From positions 62,001-126,000 of IMG/VR virus record IMGVR_UViG_3300007513_000001: a stretch of DNA of 64,000 nt; one strand, written 5' to 3'. Below are positions 20,049 to 51,345 of this stretch, piece after piece; positions within the stretch are counted from its first letter, which is position 1, and each line of letters starts with the position of its first letter. The notes below the pieces were generated by a model. It had not been told where the DNA came from and made no database searches. It worked only from the letters and a program-made list of their open reading frames with translations. The translations under genes were made by a program, and so were the position numbers.

Positions 20049-21986
20049 ATGCTAAGCAATTCGCCGTTTGAGACACCTCAGTCTCCAAAACTTAAAGTTC
20101 CTGAAGATGCAGAAGTCGTTTTTGTTTCTGATATGTTTGTTGAAGATTATGTCGGTGGAGCCGAACTTACGTCAGAAGCTATTATATCTTCATCTCCACT
20201 AAAAGTATTTAAACTGCACAGCAAAGATGTGACCATCGAAACTCTAGAGCAGGGACACCAAAAGTATTGGATATTTGGTAATTTTTCTGCTCTTAATATG
20301 GATCTAATACCTTCAATCGTTTCAAACATGAATTATTCTATCTTAGAATATGATTATAAATTTTGTAGATATCGCTCTCCAGAAAAACATGAAACTGAAA
20401 CCGGAGCTCCATGCGATTGTATTGAAGATATTCATGGCAAAATGATATCTGCATTTTATTATGGATCTAAGTCTCTTTGGTGGATGTCTGAAAAACAGAT
20501 GGATTTGTATCTTGAAGCGTATCCATTTTTGGCTGAAAGAGAAAACACCGTTTTGAGTAGTGTTTTTGATGATGCTTTCTTTTATTCAGTTAAGATTTTG
20601 AGAGAAAAATATAAGGATCAAGAGAAAACAGGTTGGCTAGTTTTAGGATCTAATAGCTGGATCAAAGGCGCTGATCAAGCAGAGCAATGGTGTAAAGATA
20701 ACGAAAGAGAATATGAAGTTGTTTGGAATCTAAAGTATGAAGAGCTCTTAGAAAAGCTAGCACAATCTGAAGGTTTCGTTTATCTTCCTAAGGGAAACGA
20801 CACATGCCCAAGAATGGTAATTGAAGCCAAGCTACTTGGCTGTGATTTACACTTAAATGATTATGTTCAGCACAAAGATGAGATTTGGTTTGATACCGAA
20901 GATATGTTCGATACAGAAGCATATCTCTATGCAGCTAGAGAAAGATTTTGGAACGCTATTTTAGCGACAATGAATTATGTGCCGACTATTTCTGGTTATA
21001 CCACTACTTTAAACTGTATAAAGCACAAATATCCATTTGAGGCTTCTATTAAGAGTATGTTGGGTTTTTGCGAAGAAGTTATTGTAGTTGACGGTGGTAG
21101 CGATGATGGAACTTATGAAAGGCTTAGAGAGTTAGAAAAAGAAGATAAAAGAATAAAAGTAAGTTTAGTGCTTAGAGATTGGGAAGATACTAGATTCGCC
21201 GTTTATGATGGTGCTCAAAAAGCAGTATCCCGAGATCAGTGCACAATGGACTACTGCTGGCAGCAAGATGCAGATGAGGTTGTTCACGAAGAAGATTATC
21301 AAAAAATTATTCATACAACAAGAAACTTTCCAAGGCAGTACGATCTTCTTTCTTTACCGGTTATCGAATATTGGGGAAGTTCTTCTAAAGTTAGAGCAGA
21401 TATCAATCCGTGGAAGTGGAGATTATCAAAAAATAAACCATACATTTCTCATGGCATACCAAAAGCTTTAAGAAGAACAGACAGTGACGGAAAACTATAT
21501 GCTGCTCCAGGGACCGATGGGTGTGATTACATCCACAAAGAGTCTTACGAGCCAATTCCGCACATTGGCTTTTATACTGAAGAAATTCACAAAGTAAAAA
21601 TGATGGCGTTTTCTGGAAACTCTGAAGCTTTCGAAGCTTATGAAGCTTGGTTCAACAGAGTGGTAGAACTACTACCTTCAGTACACCACTACTCGTGGAT
21701 AGACATCGGAAGAAAGATTAGAACATACAGGGATTATTGGTCTCAACATTGGCAAAGTTTATATGATATACCTCAAGAAGACACCCCAGAAAATAACATG
21801 TTTTTAGATACTTCTTGGGCAGATTCAACTGAAGAAGATATAGAAAATACTGCGAAAAAGCTTTCTGAAGAAATGGGTGGATGGGTATTCCACTCCAAGG
21901 TAGATTATAGTAATCCTACTCCCCACTTCAAGATTGATCAGACTCAACCAGCTTTAGCTATTGAGCATTATGGTGAGGAAAAATAA
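20049..21986 (+). CDS. Two-domain glycosyltransferase (GT-B/GT4-like N-terminus, GT-A/GT2 C-terminus)
   Basis: CPRMVIEAKLLGC (GT4-type C-terminal motif); VIVVDGGSDDGT and QQDADE (GT2). Confidence 0.8.
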   Translation: MLSNSPFETPQSPKLKVPEDAEVVFVSDMFVEDYVGGAELTSEAIISSSPLKVFKLHSKDVTIETLEQGHQKYWIFGNFSALNMDLIPSIVSNMNYSILEYDYKFCRYRSPEKHETETGAPCDCIEDIHGKMISAFYYGSKSLWWMSEKQMDLYLEAYPFLAERENTVLSSVFDDAFFYSVKILREKYKDQEKTGWLVLGSNSWIKGADQAEQWCKDNEREYEVVWNLKYEELLEKLAQSEGFVYLPKGNDTCPRMVIEAKLLGCDLHLNDYVQHKDEIWFDTEDMFDTEAYLYAARERFWNAILATMNYVPTISGYTTTLNCIKHKYPFEASIKSMLGFCEEVIVVDGGSDDGTYERLRELEKEDKRIKVSLVLRDWEDTRFAVYDGAQKAVSRDQCTMDYCWQQDADEVVHEEDYQKIIHTTRNFPRQYDLLSLPVIEYWGSSSKVRADINPWKWRLSKNKPYISHGIPKALRRTDSDGKLYAAPGTDGCDYIHKESYEPIPHIGFYTEEIHKVKMMAFSGNSEAFEAYEAWFNRVVELLPSVHHYSWIDIGRKIRTYRDYWSQHWQSLYDIPQEDTPENNMFLDTSWADSTEEDIENTAKKLSEEMGGWVFHSKVDYSNPTPHFKIDQTQPALAIEHYGEEK

Positions 21987-22725
21987 GTTGGATAATAAGC
22001 TCACGACAAATAAGTTTGTTTTTATAATGCCTGCCTACAATGCAATTCAAACAATATCTAGAAGTATTTTATCTGTATGGTTTCAAACTCATCCTAATTG
22101 GAAAATTATAATTCGTGATGATCTATCTACAGACGGAACTTTTGAGGCTGTAGAAAATCTCAAAAAACAATTAGGAATTTCAGATGAAAAGATTAGCATT
22201 AAAAGGAACATAGAGAAAAAATGGGAAGTCGCCAACATTTTGGATATGCTCAAAGAGTGTGACTCTGACGATATTATATGTAGACTCGATGCTGATGATT
22301 GGCTTTGCGATTGCGATATCATTACTATCTTAAATCACAGATACAATGTTTTGGATGTCGGCGCTATTTGGACAAATCACCGATGGGATTTCAGCGGCAA
22401 TAATATATCAGCAGCACTTCCAACAAATGCAGACCCATACAAGCATCCATGGGTTTCTTCTCACTTAAAGACTTTTAGAAAAAAACTAATAGAAAATGTA
22501 GATGATAAAAATTTCCGAGGTGAAGACGGAGAATACTTTAAGAGAATTGGAGACCAAGCTATTTATCTTCCGGTTCTTAAAAACGCTGAAGGGAAATGGC
22601 ACCACGAGCCTATTTGTGCTTATCATTATACTATAGACATGAAACCAGAAACATTCCAGTCTGACGACGCAAAATTCCAAAGAGACGAAGGGATTTATCT
22701 CAGAACCAGAGGATTTATTTTGTGA
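21961..22725 (+). CDS. GT2 family glycosyltransferase (likely start at ATG 21970)
   Basis: IMPAYNA, DDLSTDGT, RLDADDWL. Confidence 0.9.
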   Translation: MSIMVRKNKLDNKLTTNKFVFIMPAYNAIQTISRSILSVWFQTHPNWKIIIRDDLSTDGTFEAVENLKKQLGISDEKISIKRNIEKKWEVANILDMLKECDSDDIICRLDADDWLCDCDIITILNHRYNVLDVGAIWTNHRWDFSGNNISAALPTNADPYKHPWVSSHLKTFRKKLIENVDDKNFRGEDGEYFKRIGDQAIYLPVLKNAEGKWHHEPICAYHYTIDMKPETFQSDDAKFQRDEGIYLRTRGFIL

Positions 22726-23651
22726 TTATGGCTGACAAAAAACAGATGAAACTATTAGTAAATAGAAAACCGGTTCAGGGCCCATGGGGAGGTGGAAATC
22801 ATTTCATTAAATCTCTTCATGATAATGCTAGAAATTATGACATAGAGTTAAAACATAAGCTTGAGCCAGGACTTGATGGAATTTTTCTTATTGATCCGAG
22901 ATACGATGAGCTTGGTATTTCTATAAACGAAGTAGTAGCTTATAAGCAGGCATTTCCTAAAACTAAGATATTCTATAGGGCTAATGAGTGTGATAAAAGA
23001 AAGGGGGAAGTGAATCAAATGGATCCGTGCATTGCTGCAATGGGTCAAATCTCAGACATCTGCTTTTTCATTTCTAATTGGATAAAAAATTATCATTTAG
23101 ATTTTAATTGGAAATGCCCTACAAATATTGTGATTCCGAATGGAACTAATACTGCAATATTTAAAGATCACAATCAGAAAAAAAATAATAAAAAAACCAA
23201 TATAGTTACGCATCATTGGTCCAATAATGCTATGAAGGGCCATGATATATACGCAGCTATAGATGAGTGGATTAAAAACAAAGAAGGGTATTCTTTTACC
23301 TATGTTGGTAGGAGCCATGCCCCTCTGCCAAACTCAGAAATAGTCTCTCCTATGGCTGGTTCCGAGTTGGGTAAACTATTATCTTCCTTTGACGTATATA
23401 TCTCAGCCTCAAGATGGGACCCAGGACCCAATCATATAATAGAAAGCTTGGCTTGCGGATTACCAACTTATGCCCACGTCGACGGTGGAGGCGCTAGTGA
23501 ATTCGTTGGAAGCTCTCATGTTTATTCTAATGAAAAGGAATTAATAGAATTACTAGAAAGTAACTCTTTTATAAAAAACGCTAGTTTTACTCCAAATAGC
23601 TGGGATGAAACTATAAAAGTTTATCTTGAAAATATTGCTAGAATAATTTAA
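22722..23651 (+). CDS. GT4 family glycosyltransferase
   Basis: GPWGGGN, DVYISASRWDPGPNHIIESLACGLP. Confidence 0.85.
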   Translation: MIMADKKQMKLLVNRKPVQGPWGGGNHFIKSLHDNARNYDIELKHKLEPGLDGIFLIDPRYDELGISINEVVAYKQAFPKTKIFYRANECDKRKGEVNQMDPCIAAMGQISDICFFISNWIKNYHLDFNWKCPTNIVIPNGTNTAIFKDHNQKKNNKKTNIVTHHWSNNAMKGHDIYAAIDEWIKNKEGYSFTYVGRSHAPLPNSEIVSPMAGSELGKLLSSFDVYISASRWDPGPNHIIESLACGLPTYAHVDGGGASEFVGSSHVYSNEKELIELLESNSFIKNASFTPNSWDETIKVYLENIARII

Positions 23652-23659: not shown

Positions 23660-24448
23660 ATGTATGCTATTTGTGGAGTGGGAAATTGGGGAACTAAGCT
23701 TTTAAGAGAGTTTTCTCAAACTCAAGAATTTAAATATTTTTGCTGCAAATCTTCTGAAAAAGCTGATCTGATTAATCAAGAATTTGAAAATTTAGCTAGG
23801 GCATCTTTAGAGCAAATTTGTGCAGATGATCAAATAACCGATGTTTTAGTTTCCGTTCCAATAAAAAATCTTGCAGAATTTTCACGAAAGCTTTTGCTTA
23901 GTAATAAGAATATATTTCTCGAGAAACCAGGCTCGCAATCTTTAAATGAAATAAAAAAGCTTCAAGATATAAAATCTAGCTCTTTCGTTCATGTGAATTA
24001 TAAGTTTTTATTCCACGAAAAAATTTTAGAATTAAAAAGAAATGTCGCTGCTGGAGAAAAAATTGTAAGATTTAATTTCGAATGGCTTAAATATGGAAGT
24101 TTTGGCAACGACATTAAGCTAAACCTGTTAACGCACATACTTTCTATTTTAGAGTTTGTGTTTCCAGAAGAAAAATTTTATATGGAATATCTGACTCTCC
24201 AAAAAGATTCTCTTTTGGTAAGCTGCTTTTCAGACAATATAAGAGGCAGAATTTTAATTTGTAGAAAATCTCAAAATAGAAAGTTTCATTTAAGCGTTGA
24301 GAACTCTAATAAAACAATTAAAAAGCTTGATTTGAATTCTCAAAACGTCTTGAAAAAGTCAGCAGACTGTTTTATAAATAAAACAAATCAGAGTTTTAGA
24401 TTAGAATTTGCTAGCAAAGTTTTAAATAATTTGGAGAACATAAGATGA
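23660..24448 (+). CDS. Gfo/Idh/MocA-like NAD(P)-dependent oxidoreductase
   Basis: ICGVGNWG Rossmann motif, IFLEKP. Confidence 0.75.
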   Translation: MYAICGVGNWGTKLLREFSQTQEFKYFCCKSSEKADLINQEFENLARASLEQICADDQITDVLVSVPIKNLAEFSRKLLLSNKNIFLEKPGSQSLNEIKKLQDIKSSSFVHVNYKFLFHEKILELKRNVAAGEKIVRFNFEWLKYGSFGNDIKLNLLTHILSILEFVFPEEKFYMEYLTLQKDSLLVSCFSDNIRGRILICRKSQNRKFHLSVENSNKTIKKLDLNSQNVLKKSADCFINKTNQSFRLEFASKVLNNLENIR

Positions 24449-25488
24449 AAATTGCGGTGGTTGGTGCGGGTTTTTTTGGGATTACCGCCGCACTCAAATT
24501 AAGCGAGCTCTATGAAGTCGATTTGTTTGATTTTAGTGGAGATATTTTAACTTCTGCTTCTCGTACTAACCAGCTGAGACTTCATCGAGGATACCATTAC
24601 CCACGAAGTGAAGAAACAGTCGATTCTTTATTAAGTTCTCTTCCGAAGTTTCTTGATTTTTATGGCGAAGCAGCTATTGAAGATTATGATCATCATTATG
24701 CTATAGCTAAAGAAGGTTCATTTTTAAGCGCATCTCAATATATTGATTTTCTAGAAAGGTGTAATTTAGAATACGAAGAAATTTCTGTTGGTGGATTTGT
24801 GAATCCAGGAAAAATAGAACTACTTGTAAAAGTAAAAGAAACTCTATTAGATTATCATAAAATTTATGATATGTGTAAAGAAAGATTAATCAACTCTAAA
24901 GCTAATTTAAGATTGAATGAAATGTTTAAGCCAGTTGCGTTAAAAGACTATGACTATGTTATTAATTGCACATATTCGACGCTGAATGAGTTAACCCCCT
25001 GGGAAAAAAGAAGAGAGTATCAATTTGAAGTTTGTGAAAAAATATGCGTACAACCTCCAAAAAGTTTAGCTGGAGTAAGTTTAGTAGTTATGGATGGGCC
25101 ATTCATGTGCATTGATCCATACGCCAAGACGGGAAAGTCTTTGCTTGGAAATGTTGTCCACGCAATTCACACTTCTAACATTGGTCAAATGCCAATCGTT
25201 CCAGAAAATATAGTTCCGTATTTAAACAAGGGCATAGTAAACGTAAGAAATTTATCTAATTTTGATAAGTTCGTAGATGCAGGAAAACTCTATATTAATG
25301 ATTTCGAAAATTGCGAATATTTCGGATCGATGTTTACTGTAAGGACTGTTCTTCCCTATGTAGAAGACAGTGATGAGCGTCCGACCATAGTAACATCGAT
25401 GGATGAAAAAGTAATTAACGTATTTTCTGGAAAAATAGATACATGCGTTCAGGCTGCTGACGAAATATTAAAGGAAATAATATTATGA
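24445..25488 (+). CDS. FAD-dependent oxidoreductase (DAO-like)
   Basis: KIAVVGAGFFG, NQLRLHRGYHYPRS, VMDGPF, FSGKI. Confidence 0.85.
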   Translation: MKIAVVGAGFFGITAALKLSELYEVDLFDFSGDILTSASRTNQLRLHRGYHYPRSEETVDSLLSSLPKFLDFYGEAAIEDYDHHYAIAKEGSFLSASQYIDFLERCNLEYEEISVGGFVNPGKIELLVKVKETLLDYHKIYDMCKERLINSKANLRLNEMFKPVALKDYDYVINCTYSTLNELTPWEKRREYQFEVCEKICVQPPKSLAGVSLVVMDGPFMCIDPYAKTGKSLLGNVVHAIHTSNIGQMPIVPENIVPYLNKGIVNVRNLSNFDKFVDAGKLYINDFENCEYFGSMFTVRTVLPYVEDSDERPTIVTSMDEKVINVFSGKIDTCVQAADEILKEIIL

Positions 25489-42770: not shown

Positions 42771-43521
42771 AAACGTTCTATCTCCTGCGCATATTTCTTC
42801 TATCAAGAGAATGTTAGGTGTGGATGAATCTTTTCGAGACCACGATAAGAAGAAAAAGCCGATTAAAAGAAAAACTACCAAGCCATTAGTATGCGGTCCA
42901 GACTATCTAGAGTATCTTACAAAAAATCTAGTGTCTCCAGCAGGGGTTCGCTCTCCATATGAAGTTCCACATGTGGTAAAAAATTTAATCAAAGATAAAG
43001 TGGTGGTAGATCTCGGATGCGGATCAGGAGATCTATCTTTTGGATTTTCGAAATATGCAAAAATGGTGTATGGTATTGAAATATCGTCGAAAGTCAGGAG
43101 TAATCCAAGATGCGATAAAATAAAAAACATAAAATTGTATAAAAAACAAAATTTTTGGGAAGCGATAGAAGAAAAGGAGCTTTATGCAGACGGCGACGTA
43201 TATTATGTTTGGGGTTTCGCGCACTGTCCTCTTGGGGGCCGTAAAATAAACTTTCAAGAAAAAAAATTCCTGACAGCTAAGCATATTAAAGAAAATTTTC
43301 CCAAAGTTGTAGATAATGAAAATAGAATAATTTTAAGTTTTGCAAATATGTCAGATGTTTCTACCTGGCCATTCGATCAAATAATACCTTTTAAAACACG
43401 CGAACGTCCGATAAAGAAAATCAGACTGTTTGGAGAAGACTGGCAAAATCTATGCATAACAGTTTTAAGGTTTGATAATCCCGCAATAGAAAGTTTAGCC
43501 ACTCTTCGAACAAGAAGATAA
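42763..43521 (+). CDS. Class I SAM-dependent methyltransferase-like protein
   Basis: VVVDLGCGSG, VYGIE. Confidence 0.7.
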   Translation: MDKNVLSPAHISSIKRMLGVDESFRDHDKKKKPIKRKTTKPLVCGPDYLEYLTKNLVSPAGVRSPYEVPHVVKNLIKDKVVVDLGCGSGDLSFGFSKYAKMVYGIEISSKVRSNPRCDKIKNIKLYKKQNFWEAIEEKELYADGDVYYVWGFAHCPLGGRKINFQEKKFLTAKHIKENFPKVVDNENRIILSFANMSDVSTWPFDQIIPFKTRERPIKKIRLFGEDWQNLCITVLRFDNPAIESLATLRTRR

Positions 43522-44620: not shown

Positions 44621-46258
44621 ATGAAAATAGCGGGACTTTGGTCGGGTCACGACTGTTCTTTTTGCGTTTTAGAAGATGGGAAACCTTTAATTCACGCTGA
44701 ATATGAACGCTACAATAGAGAAAAATCCCCGCCGGGAGATTCTTCTAACTTTATGTTTGACAGGTATCCAGAGTGGCCTGCTATAACTCATTTTGCTTCT
44801 GTATATCCAAAGAAAAAACTAACGGAAAGAGAAGAATCTTATAGTTTATTAAAAAACCACATAGACGCCAATGGTGGAAAGCTATATTTTTGCTCACATC
44901 ATAAAGCTCACGCAGCAAACGCTTTTTATTCTAGTAATTTTGAGAAATCTATAATCGTCACTTTAGATGGTGGTGGTGTAGAAGACGACCGCGGTGGAGA
45001 GTCTGCATGTACGATCTGGAGGGGTGATGGAACAGAATTGAAGCATCTAAAGACCTTTCGGCCTAACGAGATTAATATCGGAGGTGTGTGGACACGAGTA
45101 ACAAGGTATGTATTTAAGCTTCAGAACGGGTGGCCAAGAGGAGGCCAAGAGGGTTCTGTAATGGCCATGGCTGCTTTTGGTGATGCATCTATCTGGGCTC
45201 AAGACTGCTGGAATTGGTTAACCAAAGACAAGATGTCTGCTGGGTTTAAGCCTCCAAACCAACCAGTTGGAGCAACTTCAGACCGTGATCCACCCCACCC
45301 TTATTTAGAACCGTGGGCCGCTCATGCTAGAGAGTCAGAGCAAAATAGATTTGATATAGCTGCTGGTTTGCAAGAAGCGACCGAAGCTCTTATAAGACAA
45401 ATAATAGAATATGCGCTAAGCTTTGATAGCGATATAGATTCAATTTGTTTAGCTGGTGGTGTCACTTTAAATTCTGTTGCCATGGGAAAATTATTGAAGT
45501 GGTTCCCGCAATTAAAGAGAGTCTATATACCCCCTGTACCTTATGACGGTGGATTGTGTATAGGAGCGGCACAGGCTCTGTGGCACGAAGAGCTTGGAAA
45601 TCCGAGAATTAAATGGGAGCATAATTTTACTCCATATTTAGGAGAAACTTGGACTGAAGAACATTTTAATGAAGTTTTAGAAAATAGAAAAAATGACATA
45701 GAAGTTTTAGAATCAAGCGTAGAAGATATAGTTTCAAAGCTTCAAGAGGGAAATATAGTGTCGGTATTCAACGGCTCGTCTGAATCTGGCCGGCGAGCTC
45801 TTGGAAATAGAAGCATATTAGTAGATCCAAGATCAACGACAATGAAAGATACTATCAATGAAAAGGTCAAGCATCGGCAATGGTATCGCCCTTTTGCTCC
45901 CTCTATATTAGAGTCTGAAGCCTCAGATTGGTTCGAAGAATATCAAGAGAGTCCGTACATGCAGTTTGTTTTAAAATTTAAAAAAGAAAAAGTTGATTTA
46001 GTACCAGCTGTGGTTCATTTAGATGGAACAGCAAGACTACAAACGGTTAGAGAGACTGATAATAAGTGGTACTATGATTTTTTGCAAGCTTGGCATAAGG
46101 CATCTGGAGTACCAATCATACTTAACACAAGCTTCAATGATAGAGAGCCCATTTGCGAAAATGTTGAGCATGCTCTAAACTGCTTTTTAGGAACCAACAT
46201 TGACTATCTTTATTTTCCAGAATATAAGAAGCTCATAAAACGAAAAGGTGCAGAGTAA
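44621..46258 (+). CDS. Carbamoyltransferase (NodU/CmcH family)
   Basis: GHD, HHKAHAANAF, TLDGGG, LAGGVTLNS, GRRALGNRSIL, KHRQWYRPFAP, LNTSFN. Confidence 0.93.
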   Translation: MKIAGLWSGHDCSFCVLEDGKPLIHAEYERYNREKSPPGDSSNFMFDRYPEWPAITHFASVYPKKKLTEREESYSLLKNHIDANGGKLYFCSHHKAHAANAFYSSNFEKSIIVTLDGGGVEDDRGGESACTIWRGDGTELKHLKTFRPNEINIGGVWTRVTRYVFKLQNGWPRGGQEGSVMAMAAFGDASIWAQDCWNWLTKDKMSAGFKPPNQPVGATSDRDPPHPYLEPWAAHARESEQNRFDIAAGLQEATEALIRQIIEYALSFDSDIDSICLAGGVTLNSVAMGKLLKWFPQLKRVYIPPVPYDGGLCIGAAQALWHEELGNPRIKWEHNFTPYLGETWTEEHFNEVLENRKNDIEVLESSVEDIVSKLQEGNIVSVFNGSSESGRRALGNRSILVDPRSTTMKDTINEKVKHRQWYRPFAPSILESEASDWFEEYQESPYMQFVLKFKKEKVDLVPAVVHLDGTARLQTVRETDNKWYYDFLQAWHKASGVPIILNTSFNDREPICENVEHALNCFLGTNIDYLYFPEYKKLIKRKGAE

Positions 46259-47109
46259 TGCAGACAACTATTGGAATTCTGGGCCAAGGGTTTGTCGGGT
46301 CTTCTGTGAAGCTAGGATTAGAAAAAGCTTATAAAATAGAAACTTACGATCTAATACCTGAAAAAGCCACGGTTGAATCTATCGGTGAGCTAGTTTGGAA
46401 ATCAGATGTTTTGTTTGTTTGTTTGCCTACCCCAATGAGAAAAGACGGAAGTTGCGACACTAGAATTATTGAATCCGCGCTGAAAGAAATAAACAATTGC
46501 TTATTAGAAATAAATAAAAGCAAGTTGGTAATCACGAAATCTACGGTCCCGCCTCAGACTCACTCAGGCTGGAGCAGCGAATATAGAAATTTAAACCTTG
46601 TTTTCAATCCAGAGTTTCTTACTGAAGCCAATGCCGCAGAAGATTTTAAGAATCAAAATAGAATAGTACTTGGTGGCCATCCATCCGATTGTGAAAAAGC
46701 TCAAAAAGTATTTCAAAAAGTATTTCCAAATATAAGTTATTTTACCACAACATACGTAACTGCAGAACTTGTGAAATATTTCATAAACTGCTTCTTAGCT
46801 GCAAAAGTCTCATTTGCTAATGAATTCTATCAACTATGTGAATCTTTAAATGCAGATTATTCTAGAGTGGTGTCTGGAGCTCTTTTGGATAAAAGAATAG
46901 GAACATCACATCTTCAGGTCCCTGGCCCAGATGGTGATTTTGGTTTCGGCGGCCACTGTTTTCCAAAAGACCTTAATGCTATGATTTATATGGCTAAAAA
47001 ACTAGACATTGATCCCAAAGTTCTTAAAGCGGCTAAACTAAAAAATTCAGAAGTTAGAAATAATAAAGACTGGGAATCTATGAAAGGGCGAGCCGTTAGT
47101 GAAGATTAA
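46258..47109 (+). CDS. UDP-glucose/GDP-mannose 6-dehydrogenase family (short form)
   Basis: GQGFVG, VCLPTP, KSTVPP, FNPEFL, GFGGHCFPKD. Confidence 0.9.
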   Translation: MQTTIGILGQGFVGSSVKLGLEKAYKIETYDLIPEKATVESIGELVWKSDVLFVCLPTPMRKDGSCDTRIIESALKEINNCLLEINKSKLVITKSTVPPQTHSGWSSEYRNLNLVFNPEFLTEANAAEDFKNQNRIVLGGHPSDCEKAQKVFQKVFPNISYFTTTYVTAELVKYFINCFLAAKVSFANEFYQLCESLNADYSRVVSGALLDKRIGTSHLQVPGPDGDFGFGGHCFPKDLNAMIYMAKKLDIDPKVLKAAKLKNSEVRNNKDWESMKGRAVSED

Positions 47110-47983
47110 TACAGATAAAAATATTTTAGTTACAGGCGGTCTAGGTTTTGTCGGCTCTAATTTAGTAGACGAATTAATATCTTCTGGTTATAAAAACATA
47201 ACTGTTATAGACGATCTATCTTCAGAGTCTGCATCTTCCGAATATATGAGAAGTGAAGTAAAGTATCTTATTAAAGATATAGTGGATCTTCCAAAGATAG
47301 AAAAAGAATTAGATCATTATGATATAGTGTTTCATCTAGCCGCTTTAGCAAGACTTCAACCATCTTTTTCAGATCCAGTTAGATATTTTGAAGTAAATTC
47401 TTTAGGAACTTTTTATCTTTTAGATTTTATGAGAAGAAAGAATAAAGATGCAAAAATAGTTTATGCAGGTTCAAGCACCGCGTTCGGAGGACCACTTTTA
47501 AATCCATATGCATTTGCCAAGCATACTGGAGAAGACATATGCCGGCTCTTTTCAGAAAATTATAAAATGAATACTGCGGTGGCTAGATTTTTTAATGTAT
47601 ACGGCCCCAGACAGCCAATCACTGGAGAGTGGGCTACAGTTATAGGAAAATTTGAGCAGCAATACATAAGCGGTGAATCGCTTACTGTGGTAGGAGACGG
47701 AACGCAGAGAAGAGACTTCACACATATTTCAGATATTGTTCTTGGGTTGATATGCCTAACAGACGGAAATCATAATGGAGAAGTCTTTTCTTTGGGCACC
47801 GGCCAAAATCACTCTCTGTTTGACGTAGCATTTGAGTTTAGTGATAATATTATATTCATTCCTGCAAGGCCAGGAGAAGCAAGAGAGACCCTTGCAGATA
47901 TATCAGCTATGACTTCAGCTACGCTCTGGAGACCGAAAACAAATTTACTAGAATATATAGCTGATTTTAAGAAAGAAATGTGA
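47099..47983 (+). CDS. NAD-dependent epimerase (UDP-glucose 4-epimerase-like SDR)
   Basis: TGGLGFVGS, HLAALAR, PYAFAK, RFFNVYGPRQ, RDFTH. Confidence 0.88.
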   Translation: MKINTDKNILVTGGLGFVGSNLVDELISSGYKNITVIDDLSSESASSEYMRSEVKYLIKDIVDLPKIEKELDHYDIVFHLAALARLQPSFSDPVRYFEVNSLGTFYLLDFMRRKNKDAKIVYAGSSTAFGGPLLNPYAFAKHTGEDICRLFSENYKMNTAVARFFNVYGPRQPITGEWATVIGKFEQQYISGESLTVVGDGTQRRDFTHISDIVLGLICLTDGNHNGEVFSLGTGQNHSLFDVAFEFSDNIIFIPARPGEARETLADISAMTSATLWRPKTNLLEYIADFKKEM

Positions 47984-48017: not shown

Positions 48018-48839
48018 ATGAATTTTCCTACTGAAAAACCACACATCTCTTATTCTGAAGTAAAAAACTGGAAAGAGTGTCCGTATAGACACAAACTGGC
48101 GTATATTGATAAAATTGACCTTGGAACTCCTTCTCCCTATTTGGATTTCGGGACTAACGTCCATGAAGGGTGCGAAAGTTTTTTAAACACTGGCGAAATA
48201 CCAAAAGAAAGATTACTTCAAAATATTCGAGATGCCTGGAACAAGCACGGTTTTGATAAGCCAGAATGGTATGAAAAGATGCCGAAATGGTACAAGCATG
48301 TTCCGGTAGAAGAGTGGTGTGAGTGGGCTTCGAACATGTGGGATGATGTTCCTGATTTTTTAGATGAAAATTTTCCAGAGTGGGAAAGAGTCAGCGCAGA
48401 AGAAATGCTATACGAAGAGATAGATAGCGCAGACATTAAATTTAAAGGTTATATCGACGCAATCATCAAAGTTCCTAGAAAAAATGGAACATATAAATAT
48501 TGGATTTTGGATTGGAAAACAGCAAAATCTTATGGTTGGGACAAGAGAAAAAGAAGAGATTTCATGATGCAGGCACAGCTTGTTCTCTACAAATATTACT
48601 GGGCTTCGAAAAACAATATTCCGTTTAAAGATGTTGGGTGTGCGTTTGTTCTTCTAAAGAGGGGCGGAAAGCCGGGCAATATGTGCGGATTATTAAAAGT
48701 TTCCGCTGGTCCCAAAGCTTTAGAACAAGCTAATAAAATGGTTTCTAGCATGATCAAAAATGTCTACAGGGGATTTTTTGTTAAAAATAGAATGAGTTGC
48801 ACTTTTTGCGACTACAAAGATACAGAATACTGCACATAG
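48018..48839 (+). CDS. PD-(D/E)XK nuclease (RecB/Cas4-like exonuclease superfamily)
   Basis: HISYSE..W..CP, FGT.VH, GYID, ILDWKT, Q...Y, C-terminal C..C......C. Confidence 0.88.
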   Translation: MNFPTEKPHISYSEVKNWKECPYRHKLAYIDKIDLGTPSPYLDFGTNVHEGCESFLNTGEIPKERLLQNIRDAWNKHGFDKPEWYEKMPKWYKHVPVEEWCEWASNMWDDVPDFLDENFPEWERVSAEEMLYEEIDSADIKFKGYIDAIIKVPRKNGTYKYWILDWKTAKSYGWDKRKRRDFMMQAQLVLYKYYWASKNNIPFKDVGCAFVLLKRGGKPGNMCGLLKVSAGPKALEQANKMVSSMIKNVYRGFFVKNRMSCTFCDYKDTEYCT

Positions 48840-48862
48840 CAGTTTAAAAAATTAAAGTTTCT

Positions 48863-48897
48863 AAGGGCCATTTTTTACCGTTTGGCCCTTTTTTATT
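48863..48897 (+). terminator. Rho-independent terminator
   Basis: Stem AAGGGCCA (48863-70) / TGGCCCTT (48883-90), 12-nt loop, followed by TTTTATT. Confidence 0.7.
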
Positions 48898-48902: not shown

Positions 48903-48934
48903 GAATTAGTTCGAAGGGAGAGGTTAATTTCGAA

Positions 48935-50185
48935 ATGAAAAAAAAGAAAAAAATTCTAATTTTATCAGATCATGCCTTGAGTACCTCGGGAGTCGGTACT
49001 CAAACTCGCCATTTAGTGAATGGCTTATTAGCTAAGGGCGAATGGTCTTTTAGACAATTTGGTGCGGCAATAAAGCATGAAAATTACGATGTAGTTCAAG
49101 TGAGCGAAGATTTCATAATCAAGCCCATTGATGGTTTTGGAAATCCCGATATGCTTAGGTTAGCTTTAATTACTGAAAAACCAGACATATTGTTTATTTT
49201 TACTGATCCGAGATTTTTCATCTGGCTATTTGAAATGGAGGATGAAATTCATCAAATTTGCCCTATAGTTTGGTGGCATGTTTGGGACAATTATCCATAT
49301 CCCCAGTTTAATAACGAGTTTTATCAATCAACTGATTTAATCAACTGCCACTCTCACTTAACTTATAAGATGGTCGGAGAAAAGTTTCCAGAAAAAACTA
49401 ATTTTGTTCCTCACGCTTTACCACCAAATGTATTTTTCCCTATGCAAAAATCTCAAATTTTAAGCTTGAAAGAGCAGGCTCTTGGAAAAGAAAAGAAAGA
49501 TAACTTTGTCGTATTTTGGATGAACAGAAACGCGCGTAGAAAAAGAACAAACGATGTCTTGGTATCTTGGAGCTTGTTTGTGAAACAACTTGAAGAAAAA
49601 CATGGGAAAAGGGACGTTACTTTATTGATGCACACAGACCCCCAAGACCCGGAAGGACCCAATCTTTTTGCCACGGGAGAGATGCTCGGAATACAAGATA
49701 CAGTAGTTTTCTCTAATCAAAGAGTTGGTTTCGAGCAAATAAACATAATGCACAATATCAGTGATGCTTGTTTGAATATATCTTATGCTGAAGGTTTCGG
49801 TTTAGCTACTTTAGAATCGATGCAAGCTGGTACTCCTATAATAGCTGCAAAAACCGGGGGATTAACTCGCCAAGTTGTTGATCATCGAGATGGCTCCGAA
49901 AATGGTGTTGCCCTTGATATAGATTTAAAAACTTTGGTTGGGTCACAGAGTGTTCCATACATTTATGAAGATTACTGCTCAAACGAGAGTGTGGCAAACG
50001 CCATTATGAAAATGTATGAAAAAACACCAGAAGAAAAAGAGCAGCTATCGCAAAAGGTTATAGATTACGTAGATTCTGAATTTTCTTATCAAAAAACAAT
50101 TGATCTCTGGAACGATACTCTCAATGACACCTTAGAAAACTGGAAATCAAAATATCAGAGAAAATTCTTAGGAGAAGTAAAATGA
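48935..50185 (+). CDS. GT4 family glycosyltransferase
   Basis: SGVGTQ, NRNARRK, AEGFGLATLESMQAGTPII. Confidence 0.9.
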   Translation: MKKKKKILILSDHALSTSGVGTQTRHLVNGLLAKGEWSFRQFGAAIKHENYDVVQVSEDFIIKPIDGFGNPDMLRLALITEKPDILFIFTDPRFFIWLFEMEDEIHQICPIVWWHVWDNYPYPQFNNEFYQSTDLINCHSHLTYKMVGEKFPEKTNFVPHALPPNVFFPMQKSQILSLKEQALGKEKKDNFVVFWMNRNARRKRTNDVLVSWSLFVKQLEEKHGKRDVTLLMHTDPQDPEGPNLFATGEMLGIQDTVVFSNQRVGFEQINIMHNISDACLNISYAEGFGLATLESMQAGTPIIAAKTGGLTRQVVDHRDGSENGVALDIDLKTLVGSQSVPYIYEDYCSNESVANAIMKMYEKTPEEKEQLSQKVIDYVDSEFSYQKTIDLWNDTLNDTLENWKSKYQRKFLGEVK

Positions 50186-51345
50186 AAAAAGCTATTATTA
50201 GAGGACCGCTTCTTACTCTTTCTGGATATGGAGTCCACACTCGCCAGATATTCAAGTGGCTCCATGAAAGAGACGATATAGAAATAAAAGTTCAAACATT
50301 GCCATGGGGCATTACTCCTTGGTTACTTGATGAAAATCGACAAGATGGATTAATCAAAGAGATTTTTAAGAGAACAGATTACAACCCTCAAGCAGAAAGA
50401 TTTGATTATTCGTTTCAGGTTCAGCTTCCAAATGAGTGGGATTCGTCTTTAGCTTCTTACAACGTGGGTGTAACTGCCGCTGTAGAAACTGATCGGTGTT
50501 CACCCAAGTGGATCGAAGCATGCAATAAAATGAACCACATAATAGTTCCTTCAGAACACACTAAAAAAGTACTGCAGAACTCAGGAAACTTGTCAGTTCC
50601 AATTTCAGTAATACCAGAAAGTTATCCAGACGCTTTAGTTAACTGCGAAGAAAATCAGCCGTTATCTCTTGATACCAGCTTTAACTTTCTTCTATTCGGT
50701 CAGATAACTGGAAACAATCCTTTTAACGACAGAAAAAATACTTTCTTCGCCATAAAGTGGCTTTGCGAAACTTTTAAAGACGATCCAGATGTGGGCATTG
50801 TTGTTAAAACTAATCACGGAAAGAATACTAAAGTAGATAGAAGAATAACGATGAGTCTATTAAAAAATCTTATAGACGAAGTCCGCACTGGTGAATATCC
50901 TAAAATATATTTGCTTCATGGAGATTTAACAGAACAAGAATTATCAGATGTTTATCGAGAAAAATCGATAAAAGCTCTTGTAGCTCCATCAAGAGGCGAA
51001 GGTTTTGGATTGCCTCTTTTAGAAGCTGCCGCTTCTGAACTTCCAATAATAGCCACTAACTGGTCAGGCCATTTAGATTTTCTAAACAAGGGAAAATTTA
51101 TAAAACTTAATTATAGTTTGGTGCCAATCCATAAGTCTAGAGTAGATAATAGTATTTTTGTAGAGGGTTCTTGTTGGGCAGATGTAATAGAGTCTGATTT
51201 TAAAAAGAAAGTTTCTAAATTTAGAAAAGCTTCCGATATACCAAAGAGTTGGGCTAAAGATTTAGCAAAAATAATAAAAGAAGAGTTTTCTCATAAAGCG
51301 ATCAGTAAAAAATATGATGAATTTTTGGACGAAATAGAAAAGTGA
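50182..51345 (+). CDS. GT4 family glycosyltransferase
   Basis: SGYGVH, DRKN, SRGEGFGLPLLEAAAS.LPIIATNWSG. Confidence 0.9.
   Translation: MKKAIIRGPLLTLSGYGVHTRQIFKWLHERDDIEIKVQTLPWGITPWLLDENRQDGLIKEIFKRTDYNPQAERFDYSFQVQLPNEWDSSLASYNVGVTAAVETDRCSPKWIEACNKMNHIIVPSEHTKKVLQNSGNLSVPISVIPESYPDALVNCEENQPLSLDTSFNFLLFGQITGNNPFNDRKNTFFAIKWLCETFKDDPDVGIVVKTNHGKNTKVDRRITMSLLKNLIDEVRTGEYPKIYLLHGDLTEQELSDVYREKSIKALVAPSRGEGFGLPLLEAAASELPIIATNWSGHLDFLNKGKFIKLNYSLVPIHKSRVDNSIFVEGSCWADVIESDFKKKVSKFRKASDIPKSWAKDLAKIIKEEFSHKAISKKYDEFLDEIEK

What the first reader, a model, noticed from the sequence alone, without database searches (positions are those of the whole stretch)
20049..51345. ~31-kb glycan biosynthesis island with about 11 glycosyltransferases in a phage
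Seen: about 36 co-oriented genes covering GT2, GT4, GT9 and GT29 types, nucleotide-sugar pathways and tailoring enzymes (formyl, carbamoyl, methyl, deacetylase, oxygenase). I recognise no Wzx/Wzy/Wzz/Wza, ABC exporter or initiating phosphoglycosyl transferase. Established: bacterial O-antigen and capsule loci normally include such export or polymerisation genes. Inference: the glycan is built in the cytoplasm on a cytoplasmic acceptor, such as virion proteins or DNA, rather than exported to the host surface.
Basis: partly seen in the sequence, partly recalled or inferred. Interest (0 to 1): 0.7.

Follow-up and report, generated by a model that had tools for sequence, protein, structure and literature searches.

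The report
Variable glycan-building island in a jumbo phage
A complete 293-kb aquatic phage devotes about 31 kb to making unusual sugars and joining them into a glycan, carries no genes to export it, and so most likely decorates its own particles, though this is not proven.

Summary
Window 20049-51345 carries 35 co-oriented ORFs. They hold 11 glycosyltransferase (GT) domains in 10 proteins, of GT2, GT4, GT9 and GT29 types, plus one candidate. They also encode pathways for ADP-heptose, a dTDP-3-amino/formamido-6-deoxyhexose and a sialic-acid-like nonulosonic acid, with formyl, carbamoyl and methyl tailoring enzymes.

The record is a complete phage genome with terminal repeats. The island is syntenic in a relative and occurs in several independent samples, so it is not a misassembly.

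No Wzx, Wzy, ABC exporter, initiating phosphoglycosyl transferase or other many-pass exporter was found in the genome.

New here: the island is a hotspot. About 30 related IMG/VR contigs keep the same bracket: a virus-only bifunctional GT, a GT2, sugar-nucleotide genes, a nuclease and a GT4 pair. The distance between the bracket's ends ranges from about 8 to 36 kb, and the middle cassettes are swapped.

The genome also encodes a dCMP-hydroxymethylase-like ThyA homologue. Relatives that keep the GT core lack it, and a cultured distant relative with the GT4 pair has unglycosylated dC, dT and dA. DNA is therefore an unlikely main acceptor.

Best reading (about 0.4): a cytoplasmic, strain-variable glycan on virion proteins. 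Remodelling of the host envelope through host export machinery remains a serious rival.

The parts
15424..19815 (+). Context: 1463-aa Gly/Ser/Thr-rich repetitive fibre-like ORF directly upstream of the island
   Evidence: Composition and internal repeats. Only the N-terminal 495 aa are conserved in G001, at 51%. Present between PhoH and the first GT in only some relatives.
20049..21986 (+). Bifunctional GT: GT-B domain (residues ~20-310) fused to a GT2 domain (~314-645). This is the 5' bracket of the island.
   Evidence: Pfam GT2. AF2 model pLDDT 89.8. N-terminal domain Z 18.7 to HepE/BshA/MshA; best match of the GT2 domain is the SunS peptide S-glycosyltransferase, E 1.4e-9. 29 IMG/VR relatives at 52-82% identity and none in GenBank phages.
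21961..22725 (+). GT2 glycosyltransferase (conserved bracket gene)
   Evidence: PF00535 E 2.9e-17. Follows the first GT in nearly all relatives.
22722..23651 (+). GT1/GT4-like glycosyltransferase (weak)
   Evidence: PF00534 E 1.9e-5, just below the cut-off. 70% identity in G001.
23660..24448 (+). GFO/IDH/MocA-type sugar oxidoreductase
   Evidence: PF01408 E 1.6e-9.
24445..25488 (+). FAD/NAD(P)-binding oxidoreductase of unassigned role
   Evidence: PF01266 and PF13450, both weak.
25485..26399 (+). GT4 glycosyltransferase
   Evidence: PF13692, PF00534 and PF13439, all above cut-off.
26396..27253 (+). GT9 heptosyltransferase-like
   Evidence: PF01075 E 6.9e-13. Weak matches to LPS heptosyltransferase I and II models.
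27250..28209 (+). ADP-glycero-manno-heptose 6-epimerase (HldD)
   Evidence: TIGR02197, 281 bits against a cut-off of 274.6.
28190..28582 (+). Heptose 1-phosphate adenylyltransferase (HldE domain II type)
   Evidence: TIGR02199 E 2.5e-47.
28536..29321 (+). Heptose 7-phosphate kinase-like (HldE domain I, PfkB family)
   Evidence: TIGR02198 E 1.6e-36; PF00294.
29311..30198 (+). Candidate divergent, virus-restricted GT-A-like protein
   Evidence: No Pfam or NCBIfam hit. Atlas feature score 0.98 to viral clusters that partly carry PF00535. Lead only.
30198..30620 (+). FdtA-type 3,4-ketoisomerase
   Evidence: PF05523 E 8e-10.
30550..31572 (+). dTDP-glucose 4,6-dehydratase-like
   Evidence: TIGR01181 E 3.6e-92. 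Best bacterial relative is 57% identical and sits in an aminotransferase-FdtA-RmlB cluster.
31565..32602 (+). UDP-GlcNAc 4,6-dehydratase (PseB/FnlA-like); part of the variable cassette
   Evidence: PF02719 E 4.7e-78; TIGR03589 E 1.6e-78. No homologue in G001.
32599..33726 (+). DegT/PseC-type sugar aminotransferase
   Evidence: PF01041 E 1.9e-85.
33717..34484 (+). Sugar N-formyltransferase 1 (cassette gene)
   Evidence: PF00551 E 5e-18; ArnA-type and dTDP-4-amino-sugar formyltransferase models. Absent from G001.
34488..35177 (+). Unknown; weak polysaccharide-deacetylase likeness (cassette gene)
   Evidence: PF01522 E 0.079; TIGR02764 E 2e-4. Absent from G001.
35180..35860 (+). Formyltransferase 2 (cassette gene)
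   Evidence: PF00551 E 3e-12. Absent from G001.
35863..36606 (+). GT-A-like glycosyltransferase (weak)
   Evidence: PF13712 E 0.0015. 37% identity in G001.
36576..37337 (+). PhyH-like 2-oxoglutarate oxygenase (weak)
   Evidence: PF05721 E 3.5e-4, 21.4 bits against a cut-off of 22.
37347..38955 (+). Two ORFs of unknown function (327 and 210 aa) at the head of the nonulosonic-acid module
   Evidence: Only a weak ParB_N likeness for the first. Both conserved in G001 at 67% and 52%.
38948..39574 (+). GT29 sialyltransferase-like minimal catalytic domain (208 aa, no membrane anchor)
   Evidence: PF00777, 78 bits against a cut-off of 23. Sialylmotifs L, S, III and VS align to ST3Gal-I 2wnb. Only ten homologues found by the word-based search.
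39575..40222 (+). CMP-nonulosonic acid synthetase
   Evidence: PF02348; TIGR03584 E 1.2e-9. 45% identity in LR756508.
40200..41021 (+). NeuB-family nonulosonic acid synthase (no SAF domain)
   Evidence: PF03102 E 7.6e-64. The NeuB_NnaB model scores higher than PseI.
41022..41735 (+). HAD-type sugar phosphatase fused to a cupin
   Evidence: TIGR01689 E 2.6e-7 over residues 3-105; PF07883 over 151-217.
41736..42770 (+). NDP-sugar epimerase/dehydratase (SDR)
   Evidence: PF01370 E 3e-35. 88% identity in G001.
42763..43521 (+). SAM methyltransferase (cassette gene)
   Evidence: Weak methyltransferase Pfam hits. Absent from G001, which carries another methyltransferase and a B12-radical SAM enzyme instead.
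43586..44608 (+). GT2 glycosyltransferase
   Evidence: PF00535 E 1.7e-15.
44621..46258 (+). NodU/CmcH-type O-carbamoyltransferase
   Evidence: PF16861 E 2.9e-61; PF02543.
46258..47109 (+). Short nucleotide-sugar 6-dehydrogenase (UDP-glucose dehydrogenase type); bracket gene
   Evidence: TIGR03026, 195 bits against a cut-off of 189.8. Present in the minimal islands.
47099..47983 (+). NDP-sugar epimerase or decarboxylase (SDR); bracket gene
   Evidence: PF01370 E 1e-44.
48018..48839 (+). PD-(D/E)XK (Cas4/RecB-like) nuclease, always next to the GT4 pair
   Evidence: PF12705 E 5e-23. Same adjacency in Mel-JY01, immuto and LR756508.
48863..48896 (+). Terminator-like GC hairpin followed by a U run
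   Evidence: -12.9 kcal/mol, z = -2.2; sequence read.
48935..50185 (+). GT4 glycosyltransferase, first of the conserved pair
   Evidence: PF00534 and PF20706. 60-67% identity in clade relatives and about 30-35% in Mel-JY01, immuto and LR756508. One identical 169-nt contig in an RNA library.
50182..51345 (+). GT4 glycosyltransferase, second of the pair; 3' bracket of the island
   Evidence: PF00534 and PF20706. Tandem with the first in Mel-JY01 and immuto.
51342..51653 (+). 103-aa protein with one N-terminal membrane helix. Its start overlaps the GT4 stop.
   Evidence: Hydropathy 2.22. No family hit. Syntenic in relatives.
55100..57441 (+). Context: gp25-like and gp6-like baseplate wedge genes
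   Evidence: phrog_43 and phrog_219.

Best explanation
The island is a genuine, phage-owned glycan factory that works without any export apparatus of its own.

A conserved bracket forms the ancestral core. It consists of the bifunctional GT-B+GT2 enzyme, a GT2, a UDP-glucose-dehydrogenase-type enzyme with an SDR, a nuclease and a tandem GT4 pair. In this phage about 23 kb of exchangeable cassettes have been inserted into that bracket. They supply activated sugars:
- ADP-L,D-heptose, with a GT9.
- A dTDP-3-amino/formamido-3,6-dideoxyhexose.
- A 2,4-diamino-type UDP sugar.
- A CMP-activated sialic-acid-like nonulosonic acid, with a GT29-type transferase.
Carbamoyl, methyl and oxidative tailoring enzymes are also present.

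All enzymes are predicted to be soluble, so the heteroglycan is assembled in the cytoplasm of the infected cell. The most likely acceptor is a phage-made one, namely virion proteins such as fibres or capsid decoration. That would give particles a strain-variable sugar coat, as in giant-virus fibrils and mycobacteriophage capsids.

Shown: gene content, absence of export genes, conservation and cassette swapping. Inferred: the sugar identities, the timing and above all the acceptor.
For: - Gene content.
- No membrane or export proteins in a complete genome.
- Phage-typical codon use in the island (r = 0.93).
- Same bracket in about 30 contigs, with island length from about 8 kb (L115, L120, L121) through 15 kb (G003) and 28 kb (G004, G005, G008) to 36 kb (G001).
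- Cassette replacement between G000 and G001. G000 has a PseB-like enzyme, two formyltransferases and a methyltransferase. G001 has RmlA-like and extra DegT/SDR genes, a ferredoxin and a B12-radical SAM enzyme.
- The nuclease-GT4-GT4 triad, with further sugar genes, in phages of Microcystis and Flavobacterium, hosts of different phyla. This points to an acceptor that travels with the phage.
- The GT core is uncoupled from pyrimidine hydroxymethylation, and immuto DNA has canonical dC, dT and dA.
- The best solved-structure match of the clade-specific GT2 domain is a peptide glycosyltransferase, SunS. This is weak support.
- Precedents: Megavirinae clusters of 6-33 genes for fibril glycans, clade-specific (PMC10117803), and mycobacteriophage capsid and tail-tube glycans (cited in PMC12619734).
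- From my own knowledge, not tested here: both heptose (autotransporter heptosyltransferases) and nonulosonic acids (flagellin glycosylation) are known to be added to proteins inside bacterial cells.
Against: - No direct evidence for any acceptor.
- Fold matches of the GT-B and GT-A domains also include lipid-, teichoic-acid-, small-molecule- and DNA-directed enzymes, so they do not discriminate.
- The upstream fibre ORF is missing from many relatives that have large islands, so it is not an obligate partner.
- The gp23-like capsid proteins show no C-terminal tail of the mycobacteriophage kind.
- The enzyme families are those of LPS, capsule and O-antigen loci. The published reading of similar cyanophage clusters is change of the host surface (PMC7824862; PMC12801897).
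- A small membrane-anchored protein is translationally coupled to the GT4 pair.
Confidence: 0.4

Rival explanations
1. Remodelling of the host envelope. The soluble phage enzymes make unusual nucleotide sugars and extend host undecaprenyl-linked or lipid A-core intermediates at the inner face of the membrane. The host's own initiating transferase, flippase or ABC transporter, and ligase then put the altered glycan on the cell surface. This would block superinfection, re-adsorption of progeny or grazing.
For: - The enzyme families (HldD/HldE/GT9, RmlB/FdtA/DegT, NeuB with a CMP synthetase, UDP-glucose dehydrogenase, GT2/GT4) are typical of LPS, O-antigen and capsule loci.
- Cassette-type variation resembles serotype loci.
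- This is the standard reading of cyanophage clusters (PMC7824862; PMC12801897).
- The prophage GT TarP, which modifies teichoic acid before host export, is a precedent for a soluble phage GT acting on a host polymer (as described in the Pyle preprint).
- A membrane-anchored 103-aa protein is coupled to the GT4 pair.
Against: - There is no initiating transferase, flippase, polymerase or ligase anywhere in a complete genome. Every membrane step would therefore have to accept a foreign glycan.
- The GT core is a conserved clade trait and is shared with phages of hosts in different phyla with different envelopes.
- The genes have no close bacterial relatives: at most 57% identity for the RmlB-like enzyme, and about 38% or less otherwise. 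There is thus no sign of tuning to a particular host locus.
Confidence: 0.25
2. DNA hypermodification. The phage replaces cytosine with 5-hydroxymethylcytosine, and some or all island GTs build an oligosaccharide on it to evade restriction and CRISPR.
For: - The genome has ThyX plus a second ThyA homologue. Its best solved relatives are MilA CMP hydroxymethylase (E 2e-22) and T4 dCMP hydroxymethylase (E 3e-18), not thymidylate synthases.
- Aligned without gaps to E. coli numbering, it keeps Cys146 and Asp169 and has Asn177 replaced by Asp. By the criteria in PMC13326640, this is the cytosine-specific, hydroxymethyl signature rather than the 5-hydroxy one.
- Precedents: mono- to tri-saccharides including heptose on 5hmC, added by LPS-like phage GTs; tri-arabinosyl cytosine; and a roughly 1-kDa substitution of thymidine in phage YerA41, described in the abstract of PMC9023294.
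- T4 alpha-glucosyltransferase is among the fold matches of the first GT (Z 16.2).
Against: - The hydroxymethylase is 112 kb from the island, whereas known pathways are usually clustered.
- It is present only in G000 and G001. It is absent from G003 (93% complete), G004, Mel-JY01, immuto and LR756508, all of which keep the GT core. No Tet/JBP enzyme was found either.
- Immuto virion DNA gives canonical dC, dT and dA.
- All island GTs are acidic to neutral, pI 4.9-7.6. This is a weak argument.
- Eleven GT domains and at least four sugar pathways far exceed any known DNA glycan.
Confidence: 0.13
3. A soluble glycoconjugate or aminoglycoside-like secondary metabolite. The island makes a small, diffusible, heavily tailored oligosaccharide that acts on the host or on competitors during infection.
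For: - Carbamoyltransferase, aminotransferases, formyltransferases, a GFO/IDH/MocA oxidoreductase, a PfkB kinase and, in G001, a B12-radical SAM enzyme recur in antibiotic sugar pathways.
- Iyer et al. raised this idea for cyanophage clusters.
- The first GT-B domain resembles the small-molecule GTs BshA, MshA and OtsA.
Against: - No aglycone or cyclitol synthase, no resistance gene and no exporter were recognised.
- Eleven GT domains suggest a long glycan rather than a small molecule.
- The resemblance to BshA and MshA is generic for GT4 enzymes.
Confidence: 0.07

Closest known systems
'LPS / cell-wall' gene clusters of large T4-like cyanophages (P-SSM2 15-gene cluster; S-SCSM2R with 22 genes and 13 GTs)
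   Same: Many GT families together with epimerase/dehydratases, a PfkB kinase, HIGH-type nucleotidyltransferases, cupins, carbamoyltransferase, 2OG oxygenase, HAD phosphatase and methyltransferases. Content differs between related phages. The function is unproven (PMC7824862; PMC12801897).
   Different: A different phage lineage: the nearest cultured relatives share only about 30% identity in baseplate and GT4 proteins. One contiguous block of 35 genes. A defined conserved bracket with an 8-36 kb variable interior. Complete heptose and nonulosonic-acid modules with GT9 and GT29.
Fibril glycosylation clusters of Megavirinae giant viruses (6-33 genes)
   Same: Virus-encoded nucleotide-sugar pathways for rare bacterial-type amino sugars plus GTs, clustered, clade-specific and independent of host glycosylation and export machinery (PMC10117803).
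   Different: Those are eukaryotic viruses, and the glycans have been demonstrated chemically on virion fibrils. Here the acceptor is unknown and the virus is a tailed phage.
Mycobacteriophage virion glycosylation
   Same: Phage-encoded soluble GTs that glycosylate capsid and tail-tube proteins in the cytoplasm (cited in PMC12619734).
   Different: To my knowledge, and not checked here, those phages carry only a few GTs and make no nucleotide sugars of their own. The sites there are C-terminal tails, which the gp23-like proteins here lack.
Phage DNA glycosylation pathways (T4 glucosyl-hmC; RB69/DLP3 arabinosyl-5hoC; metavirome GT clusters on 5hmC)
   Same: A ThyA-family cytosine hydroxymethylase is present in the genome. 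GT4-type GT-B and GT-A enzymes related to LPS enzymes are used, and heptose is a known DNA sugar.
   Different: GTs and hydroxymethylase are not clustered and do not co-occur across relatives. The scale is far larger than tri-saccharide systems.
'Moraphages', large aquatic phages (Perez-Hernandez et al. 2025)
   Same: Aquatic, 200-307 kb, four core GT orthogroups, DnaK and other chaperones, and Rhodothermus phage RM378 as a distant relative. Here: 293 kb, four conserved bracket GT genes, DnaK, and an RM378 hit of the GT4.
   Different: Membership was not tested by phylogeny. That paper does not describe the island architecture or its variability. The runs holding this phage are labelled marine or seawater, whereas most moraphages are from freshwater.

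Membership tests
Bacterial Wzx/Wzy- or ABC-transporter-dependent O-antigen/capsule locus | Initiating phosphoglycosyl transferase (WbaP/Bac_transf or WecA/Glycos_transf_4) | tested here: not met
   No match at E <= 1 in the complete genome, while the control genomes were positive.
Bacterial Wzx/Wzy- or ABC-transporter-dependent O-antigen/capsule locus | Flippase or exporter (Wzx, or an ABC transporter with a membrane subunit) and a polymerase or ligase (Wzy/WaaL) | tested here: not met
   No Polysacc_synt or Wzy_C match. ABC_tran gave only sub-threshold P-loop hits. No exporter-like many-pass membrane protein was found by hydropathy. The small membrane ORFs have no exporter family.
Bacterial Wzx/Wzy- or ABC-transporter-dependent O-antigen/capsule locus | Clustered nucleotide-sugar genes and glycosyltransferases | tested here: met
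Phage DNA glycosylation (hypermodification) pathway | Enzyme that creates a hydroxyl handle on a pyrimidine (ThyA homologue or Tet/JBP) | tested here: met
   The ThyA homologue at genome 225301-226146 is closest to MilA and T4 dCMP hydroxymethylase. It keeps D169 and has N177 replaced by D. No Tet/JBP was found.
Phage DNA glycosylation (hypermodification) pathway | GTs clustered with that enzyme and co-inherited with it | tested here: not met
   The two are 112 kb apart. The enzyme is absent from G003 (93% complete), G004, Mel-JY01, immuto and LR756508, which keep the GT core.
Phage DNA glycosylation (hypermodification) pathway | Glycosylated nucleosides in virion DNA | not testable with these tools
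   Only indirect evidence: the distant relative immuto has canonical dC, dT and dA.
Autonomous viral virion-glycosylation machinery (Megavirinae, chlorovirus or mycobacteriophage type) | Virus-encoded sugar-nucleotide pathways and soluble GTs, clustered and variable between clades | tested here: met
Autonomous viral virion-glycosylation machinery (Megavirinae, chlorovirus or mycobacteriophage type) | Glycan demonstrated on virion proteins | not testable with these tools
   Requires virions.
CAZy GT29 sialyltransferases | Sialylmotifs L, S, III and VS, and a Pfam PF00777 match above the gathering score | tested here: met
   78 bits against a cut-off of 23. The alignment to ST3Gal-I 2wnb shows the VGNSG...ID..D.V.R.N, PSTG, HY(F/W) and H....E motifs.
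CAZy GT29 sialyltransferases | Type II membrane anchor and stem (eukaryotic Golgi enzymes) | tested here: not met
   The 208-aa protein starts at motif L and has no hydrophobic segment.
ADP-L-glycero-beta-D-manno-heptose pathway | GmhA isomerase, HldE kinase, GmhB phosphatase, HldE adenylyltransferase and HldD epimerase | tested here: inconclusive
   HldD scores above the equivalog cut-off. The kinase and adenylyltransferase domains are present. No GmhA or GmhB was recognised in the island. The HAD domain at 41022 is a possible phosphatase, or the host may supply these steps.
Moraphage lineage | Aquatic phage of 200-307 kb with four core GT orthogroups and heat-shock chaperones | tested here: met
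   293 kb. Four conserved bracket GT genes. DnaK at 832 bits. A GroEL-like ORF.
Moraphage lineage | Placement inside the clade in MCP, TerL and PolB trees | not tested

The most novel reading that the evidence does not exclude
A tailed phage clade coats its own virions with a complex, strain-variable heteroglycan containing heptose, formamido sugars and a sialic-acid-like sugar added by a GT29-type enzyme. The glycan is made entirely in the cytoplasm by a phage-encoded pathway. The gene island behaves like a serotype locus, with a conserved GT bracket and swappable cassettes of 8-36 kb. This would be the bacteriophage counterpart of giant-virus fibril glycosylation.
Probability: 0.35. Interest if true: 0.8.

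Novelty: new variant of a known kind. Interest (0 to 1): 0.55.

Why it matters
Large glycan gene clusters in big aquatic phages have been known for twenty years, yet nobody has shown what they glycosylate. This clade gives a clean handle on that question.

- The core is small: the minimal island is about 8 kb, with four GT genes and two sugar-nucleotide genes.
- It expands in natural variants to more than 30 kb.
- It sits in a complete genome that demonstrably lacks export functions.
- Cultured distant relatives (Flavobacterium phage immuto and Microcystis phage Mel-JY01) keep the GT4 pair, so the acceptor can be tested directly.

If the acceptor is the virion, phage particles in the sea would carry serotype-like sugar coats. 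That would bear on adsorption, grazing, aggregation and recognition by other organisms. It would also give a prokaryotic-virus source of minimal soluble GT29 sialyltransferases and other rare-sugar enzymes.

Tried and rejected
- Nucleotide search against 50,697 phage records: no match for the flank or the island. The first GT has no tblastn match there either.
- Misassembled bacterial locus: rejected. The evidence is synteny in G001, matching codon use, terminal repeats and CheckV 100%, and presence in several runs and studies.
- Host inference: failed. The RmlB-like enzyme has one 57% bacterial hit (a Gemmatimonadota MAG at 55% GC) and about 38% or less otherwise. DnaK is 53-60% identical to five phylogenetically scattered bacteria. 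The early-promoter-like repeat has a TATAAT-type extended -10 element, which by my own knowledge is not the Bacteroidota type. That conflicts with the Bacteroidota hosts proposed for moraphages, so the host is left open.
- Timing of expression: sigma-70 and terminator scans are at the shuffle level inside the island. A late-like ATATTTAT motif precedes structural genes and, with one mismatch, the fibre ORF, but there is none within 80 nt of the first GT. This is too weak to assign a temporal class.
- Fold searches of the first GT confirm the GT-B and GT-A domains, but the matches span protein, lipid, teichoic-acid, small-molecule and DNA acceptors.
- The PF20706 'GT4-conflict' hits of the GT4 pair cover only the generic C-terminal nucleotide-sugar domain, so they were not used as evidence.
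- 7-deazaguanine modification: rejected, as there is no TGT/DpdA. The two formyltransferases follow a sugar aminotransferase and are read as sugar enzymes, not DpdN.
- RNA evidence: one 169-nt identical contig in a metatranscriptome. DNA carry-over cannot be excluded.
- The fibre ORF as obligate acceptor: rejected as a general rule, because it is absent from relatives with large islands.

Full report
WHAT IS THERE

The window is bases 62001-126000 of a 293,409-bp IMG/VR virus record with direct terminal repeats, rated 100% complete by CheckV. All large ORFs in the window are on the + strand. GC content is even at about 33-43%.

The flanks are clearly phage. Upstream are a DNA helicase, a PrkA/YeaH/SpoVR-like trio, a GroEL-like protein, a tmRNA, PhoH and a 1463-aa fibre-like ORF. 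Downstream are gp25- and gp6-like baseplate genes. The genome also has two tandem gp23-type capsid genes and a DnaK.

Between 20049 and 51345 lie 35 tightly packed ORFs. Profile searches assign the following glycosyltransferases (GTs):
- GT2 domains: 20049 (C-terminal half), 21961, 43586, and weakly 35863.
- GT4/GT1 domains: 25485, 48935, 50182, and weakly 22722.
- A GT9: 26396.
- A GT29: 38948.

An AlphaFold model of the 645-aa first protein (pLDDT 89.8) shows a further GT-B domain at residues 20-310, with Z 18.7 to HepE and BshA. That protein is therefore bifunctional.

The GT29 assignment is solid. It scores 78 bits against a cut-off of 23, and all four sialylmotifs align to mammalian ST3Gal-I. 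The protein is a bare 208-aa catalytic domain.

SUGAR PATHWAYS (family assignments shown; products inferred)

(a) ADP-heptose. HldD scores above its equivalog cut-off. Adenylyltransferase and PfkB kinase domains of the HldE type follow, next to the GT9.

(b) A dTDP-3-amino/formamido-3,6-dideoxyhexose. The components are an RmlB-like dehydratase, the FdtA isomerase, a DegT aminotransferase and two formyltransferases. A PseB/FnlA-like UDP-GlcNAc dehydratase is also present.

(c) A CMP-activated nonulosonic acid. The module comprises a NeuB-family synthase (which scores higher on the NeuB model than on PseI), a cytidylyltransferase, a HAD phosphatase fused to a cupin, and the GT29. It persists in relative G001, which lacks the PseB-like gene, and in the huge phage LR756508. 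I therefore infer a Neu/KDN-type route through a phosphorylated intermediate rather than a pseudaminic-acid route.

(d) A short UDP-glucose-dehydrogenase-type enzyme plus an SDR.

Tailoring enzymes include a NodU-type carbamoyltransferase and a methyltransferase. A PhyH-like oxygenase and a deacetylase-like ORF are only weakly supported.

EXPORT GENES

A hydropathy scan of 394 non-overlapping ORFs finds no membrane segments in the island apart from a Rossmann-motif false positive. Only one protein in the genome has more than three hydrophobic segments, a 1585-aa ORF that matches no exporter family.

Family searches of the whole genome, each with positive controls, find no Bac_transf, WecA-type transferase, Wzx or Wzy/ligase. 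ABC_tran gives only sub-threshold P-loop matches. The small membrane ORFs have no GtrA-, Wzx- or SMR-type family.

IS IT REALLY PART OF THE PHAGE?

Yes, on four grounds:
- A 242-kb relative from another metagenome (G001) has the same island in the same place, with 55-91% protein identity.
- Codon use in the island correlates with the rest of the genome at r = 0.93, and GC3 is within one standard deviation.
- Several other contigs cover the junction between the island and the baseplate genes.
- The 3' part of the island is held by at least six sequencing runs from three studies labelled marine or seawater.

COMPARATIVE ANATOMY, THE MAIN NEW RESULT

The first, bifunctional GT has 29 relatives in IMG/VR at 52-82% identity and none in GenBank phages. 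Mapping the window's proteins onto their neighbourhoods shows a minimal island of about 8 kb in contigs L115, L120 and L121. It consists of the bifunctional GT, a GT2, an SDR, a PD-(D/E)XK nuclease, a UDP-glucose-dehydrogenase-type enzyme and two GT4 genes. The same small genes that follow the island here come next.

Other clade members hold the same bracket but differ in length:
- About 15 kb in G003 (322 kb, 93% complete).
- About 28 kb in G004, G005 and G008.
- 31.3 kb here.
- About 35 kb in G009.
- 36.1 kb in G001.

Between this phage and G001 the middle is exchanged. Five genes here have no counterpart there: the PseB-like dehydratase, both formyltransferases, the deacetylase-like ORF and the methyltransferase. 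G001 instead carries an RmlA-like nucleotidyltransferase, further SDRs and a second aminotransferase, a ferredoxin, a B12-binding radical SAM enzyme and another methyltransferase.

The island is thus a serotype-locus-like hotspot with a conserved GT bracket.

At greater distance, the nuclease-GT4-GT4 triad recurs at about 30-35% identity, the same level as the baseplate protein. It is found in Microcystis phage Mel-JY01 and Flavobacterium phage immuto, while the huge phage LR756508 keeps the nuclease and one GT4. Each carries its own further GT and sugar genes. LR756508 also has the NeuB, CMP-synthetase, GT29 and HAD module.

The size, habitat, DnaK and four conserved GT genes fit the recently named moraphages, whose core genome includes four GT orthogroups. 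Membership was not tested by phylogeny.

THE DNA QUESTION

The genome has ThyX and also a ThyA homologue. The closest solved relatives of the homologue are the CMP hydroxymethylase MilA (E 2e-22) and T4 dCMP hydroxymethylase (E 3e-18). True thymidylate synthases score only 5e-11 or worse. Aligned without gaps to E. coli ThyA, it keeps Cys146, Arg166, Ser167 and Asp169 and has Asp in place of Asn177. By the criteria of Lee et al. (PMC13326640), this marks a cytosine-specific hydroxymethylase rather than a 5-hydroxycytosine synthase. The DNA of this phage therefore probably contains 5-hydroxymethylcytosine.

Phage GTs related to LPS enzymes can put up to three sugars, including heptose, on that base. 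This made DNA a serious candidate acceptor. Four observations speak against it as the main one:
- The hydroxymethylase is 112 kb away, whereas known pathways are usually clustered.
- It is present in G001 but absent from G003 (93% complete), G004, Mel-JY01, immuto and LR756508, all of which keep the GT core. A family-level ThyA search and a Tet/JBP search are also negative there.
- Published LC-UV-MS of immuto virion DNA shows canonical dA, dC and dT, with only G replaced, by a formylated deazaguanine.
- All island GTs are acidic to neutral.

One or two of the GTs specific to this phage and G001 could still serve hmC.

MECHANISM AND WEIGHING

Shown: a soluble, phage-owned, export-less glycan assembly line with a conserved core and exchangeable sugar cassettes.

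Inferred: assembly takes place in the cytoplasm, and the acceptor is the open point.

I rank virion proteins first, at about 0.4, for these reasons:
- The core is a conserved clade trait.
- It is shared by phages whose hosts have unrelated envelopes.
- It is independent of DNA hydroxymethylation.
- It has strong viral precedents: Megavirinae clusters of 6-33 genes that are clade-specific, and mycobacteriophage capsid and tail-tube glycans.

Host-envelope remodelling through host lipid-carrier and export machinery is second, at about 0.25. It is the traditional reading of cyanophage clusters, it fits the enzyme families, and a soluble prophage GT acting on teichoic acid before export is a precedent. 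However, it requires every membrane step of the host to accept a foreign glycan.

DNA as the principal acceptor is about 0.13, and a soluble glycoside about 0.07.

The fold data do not discriminate. The GT2 domain's best match is the peptide S-glycosyltransferase SunS, but teichoic-acid GTs follow closely. The GT-B domain matches BshA, MshA, WaaG, serine-rich-repeat protein GTs and T4 alpha-glucosyltransferase about equally.

Expression timing could not be settled. One identical 169-nt contig in a metatranscriptome is only a hint of transcription.

VERDICT

The kind of feature is known. New here are the bracket-and-cassette architecture, the 8-36 kb range across a clade, the complete absence of export genes in a closed genome, the soluble GT29 module and the unlinked hydroxymethylase. 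This is a new variant of a known kind, of moderate to good interest, with a clear experimental path.

Noticed in passing
window 10354-10761 (+): A phage-encoded tmRNA gene: Rfam RF00023 at 107 bits over the full model, and an ARAGORN tag peptide ANNNYHFEADRLAA. Eight tRNA genes lie elsewhere in the genome, at 7.6-9.9 kb and 274-280 kb.
   Followed up: partly
genome 225301-226146 (L004:1342-2187) and genome 215802-216416: A ThyA homologue with the cytosine-hydroxymethylase signature (closest to MilA and T4 gp42; D169 kept, N177 replaced by D) sits beside a dUTPase/dCTP-deaminase-like gene. A separate ThyX is also present. The phage DNA probably contains 5-hydroxymethylcytosine. The homologue is present in G001 but absent from more distant relatives.
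   Followed up: yes
window 2556-6992 (+): A PrkA/YeaG-like serine kinase with YeaH- and SpoVR-like partners, a bacterial stress operon, carried by the phage. About 32% identity to genes annotated 'serine kinase' in Thermus phages and to YeaG of Enterobacter phage LAU1.
   Followed up: partly
genome 13-45 kb and 245-281 kb (outside the window); one in-ORF copy at window 2306: Thirteen intergenic copies of an early-promoter-like repeat, TTCTGTAAAAAA-N14-TATGGTATAATA followed by ACTATAAGG. None lies in or beside the island. The TATAAT-type extended -10 element is not what I would expect for a Bacteroidota host.
   Followed up: partly
genome 176269-180150: Two tandem gp23-type major-capsid-like genes of about 630 aa each. 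Both match the Gp23 profile in two pieces, with an insertion between them.
   Followed up: no
window 1394-1930 (+): A second, more divergent heptose-1-phosphate adenylyltransferase-like gene (TIGR02199 E 1.5e-16) lies 18 kb upstream of the island, next to the helicase.
   Followed up: no
window 51342-51653 (+): A 103-aa protein with a single N-terminal membrane helix and an acidic tail. Its start codon overlaps the stop of the second GT4. It is syntenic in relatives and has no family match. It could be a membrane tether for the GT pair or an unrelated morphogenesis or lysis protein.
   Followed up: partly
L016:9164-12898 (G001 64164-67898): In place of this phage's cassette, the relative carries two SDRs, a ferredoxin and a B12-binding radical SAM enzyme, a set typical of sugar C-methylation in antibiotic pathways.
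   Followed up: partly
window 20049-21986, residues ~106-124: The GT-B domain of the first GT has residues invariant or nearly so across 24 relatives: C106, H114, C122 and C124 (consensus CKYRSPEKH...PCDCH). This looks like a metal-binding site, which is unusual for GT-B enzymes.
   Followed up: no
genome 34067-34498 (-) and 281042-282820 (+): A 143-aa membrane fatty-acid-hydroxylase-family protein with His boxes (PF04116 E 1.3e-9), and a full-length DnaK (832 bits).
   Followed up: no
window 48863-48896: The only clear intrinsic-terminator-like hairpin in the island lies between the nuclease and the GT4 pair. The simple scan missed it because its loop is 12 nt. The GT4 pair may therefore be a separate transcription unit.
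   Followed up: partly
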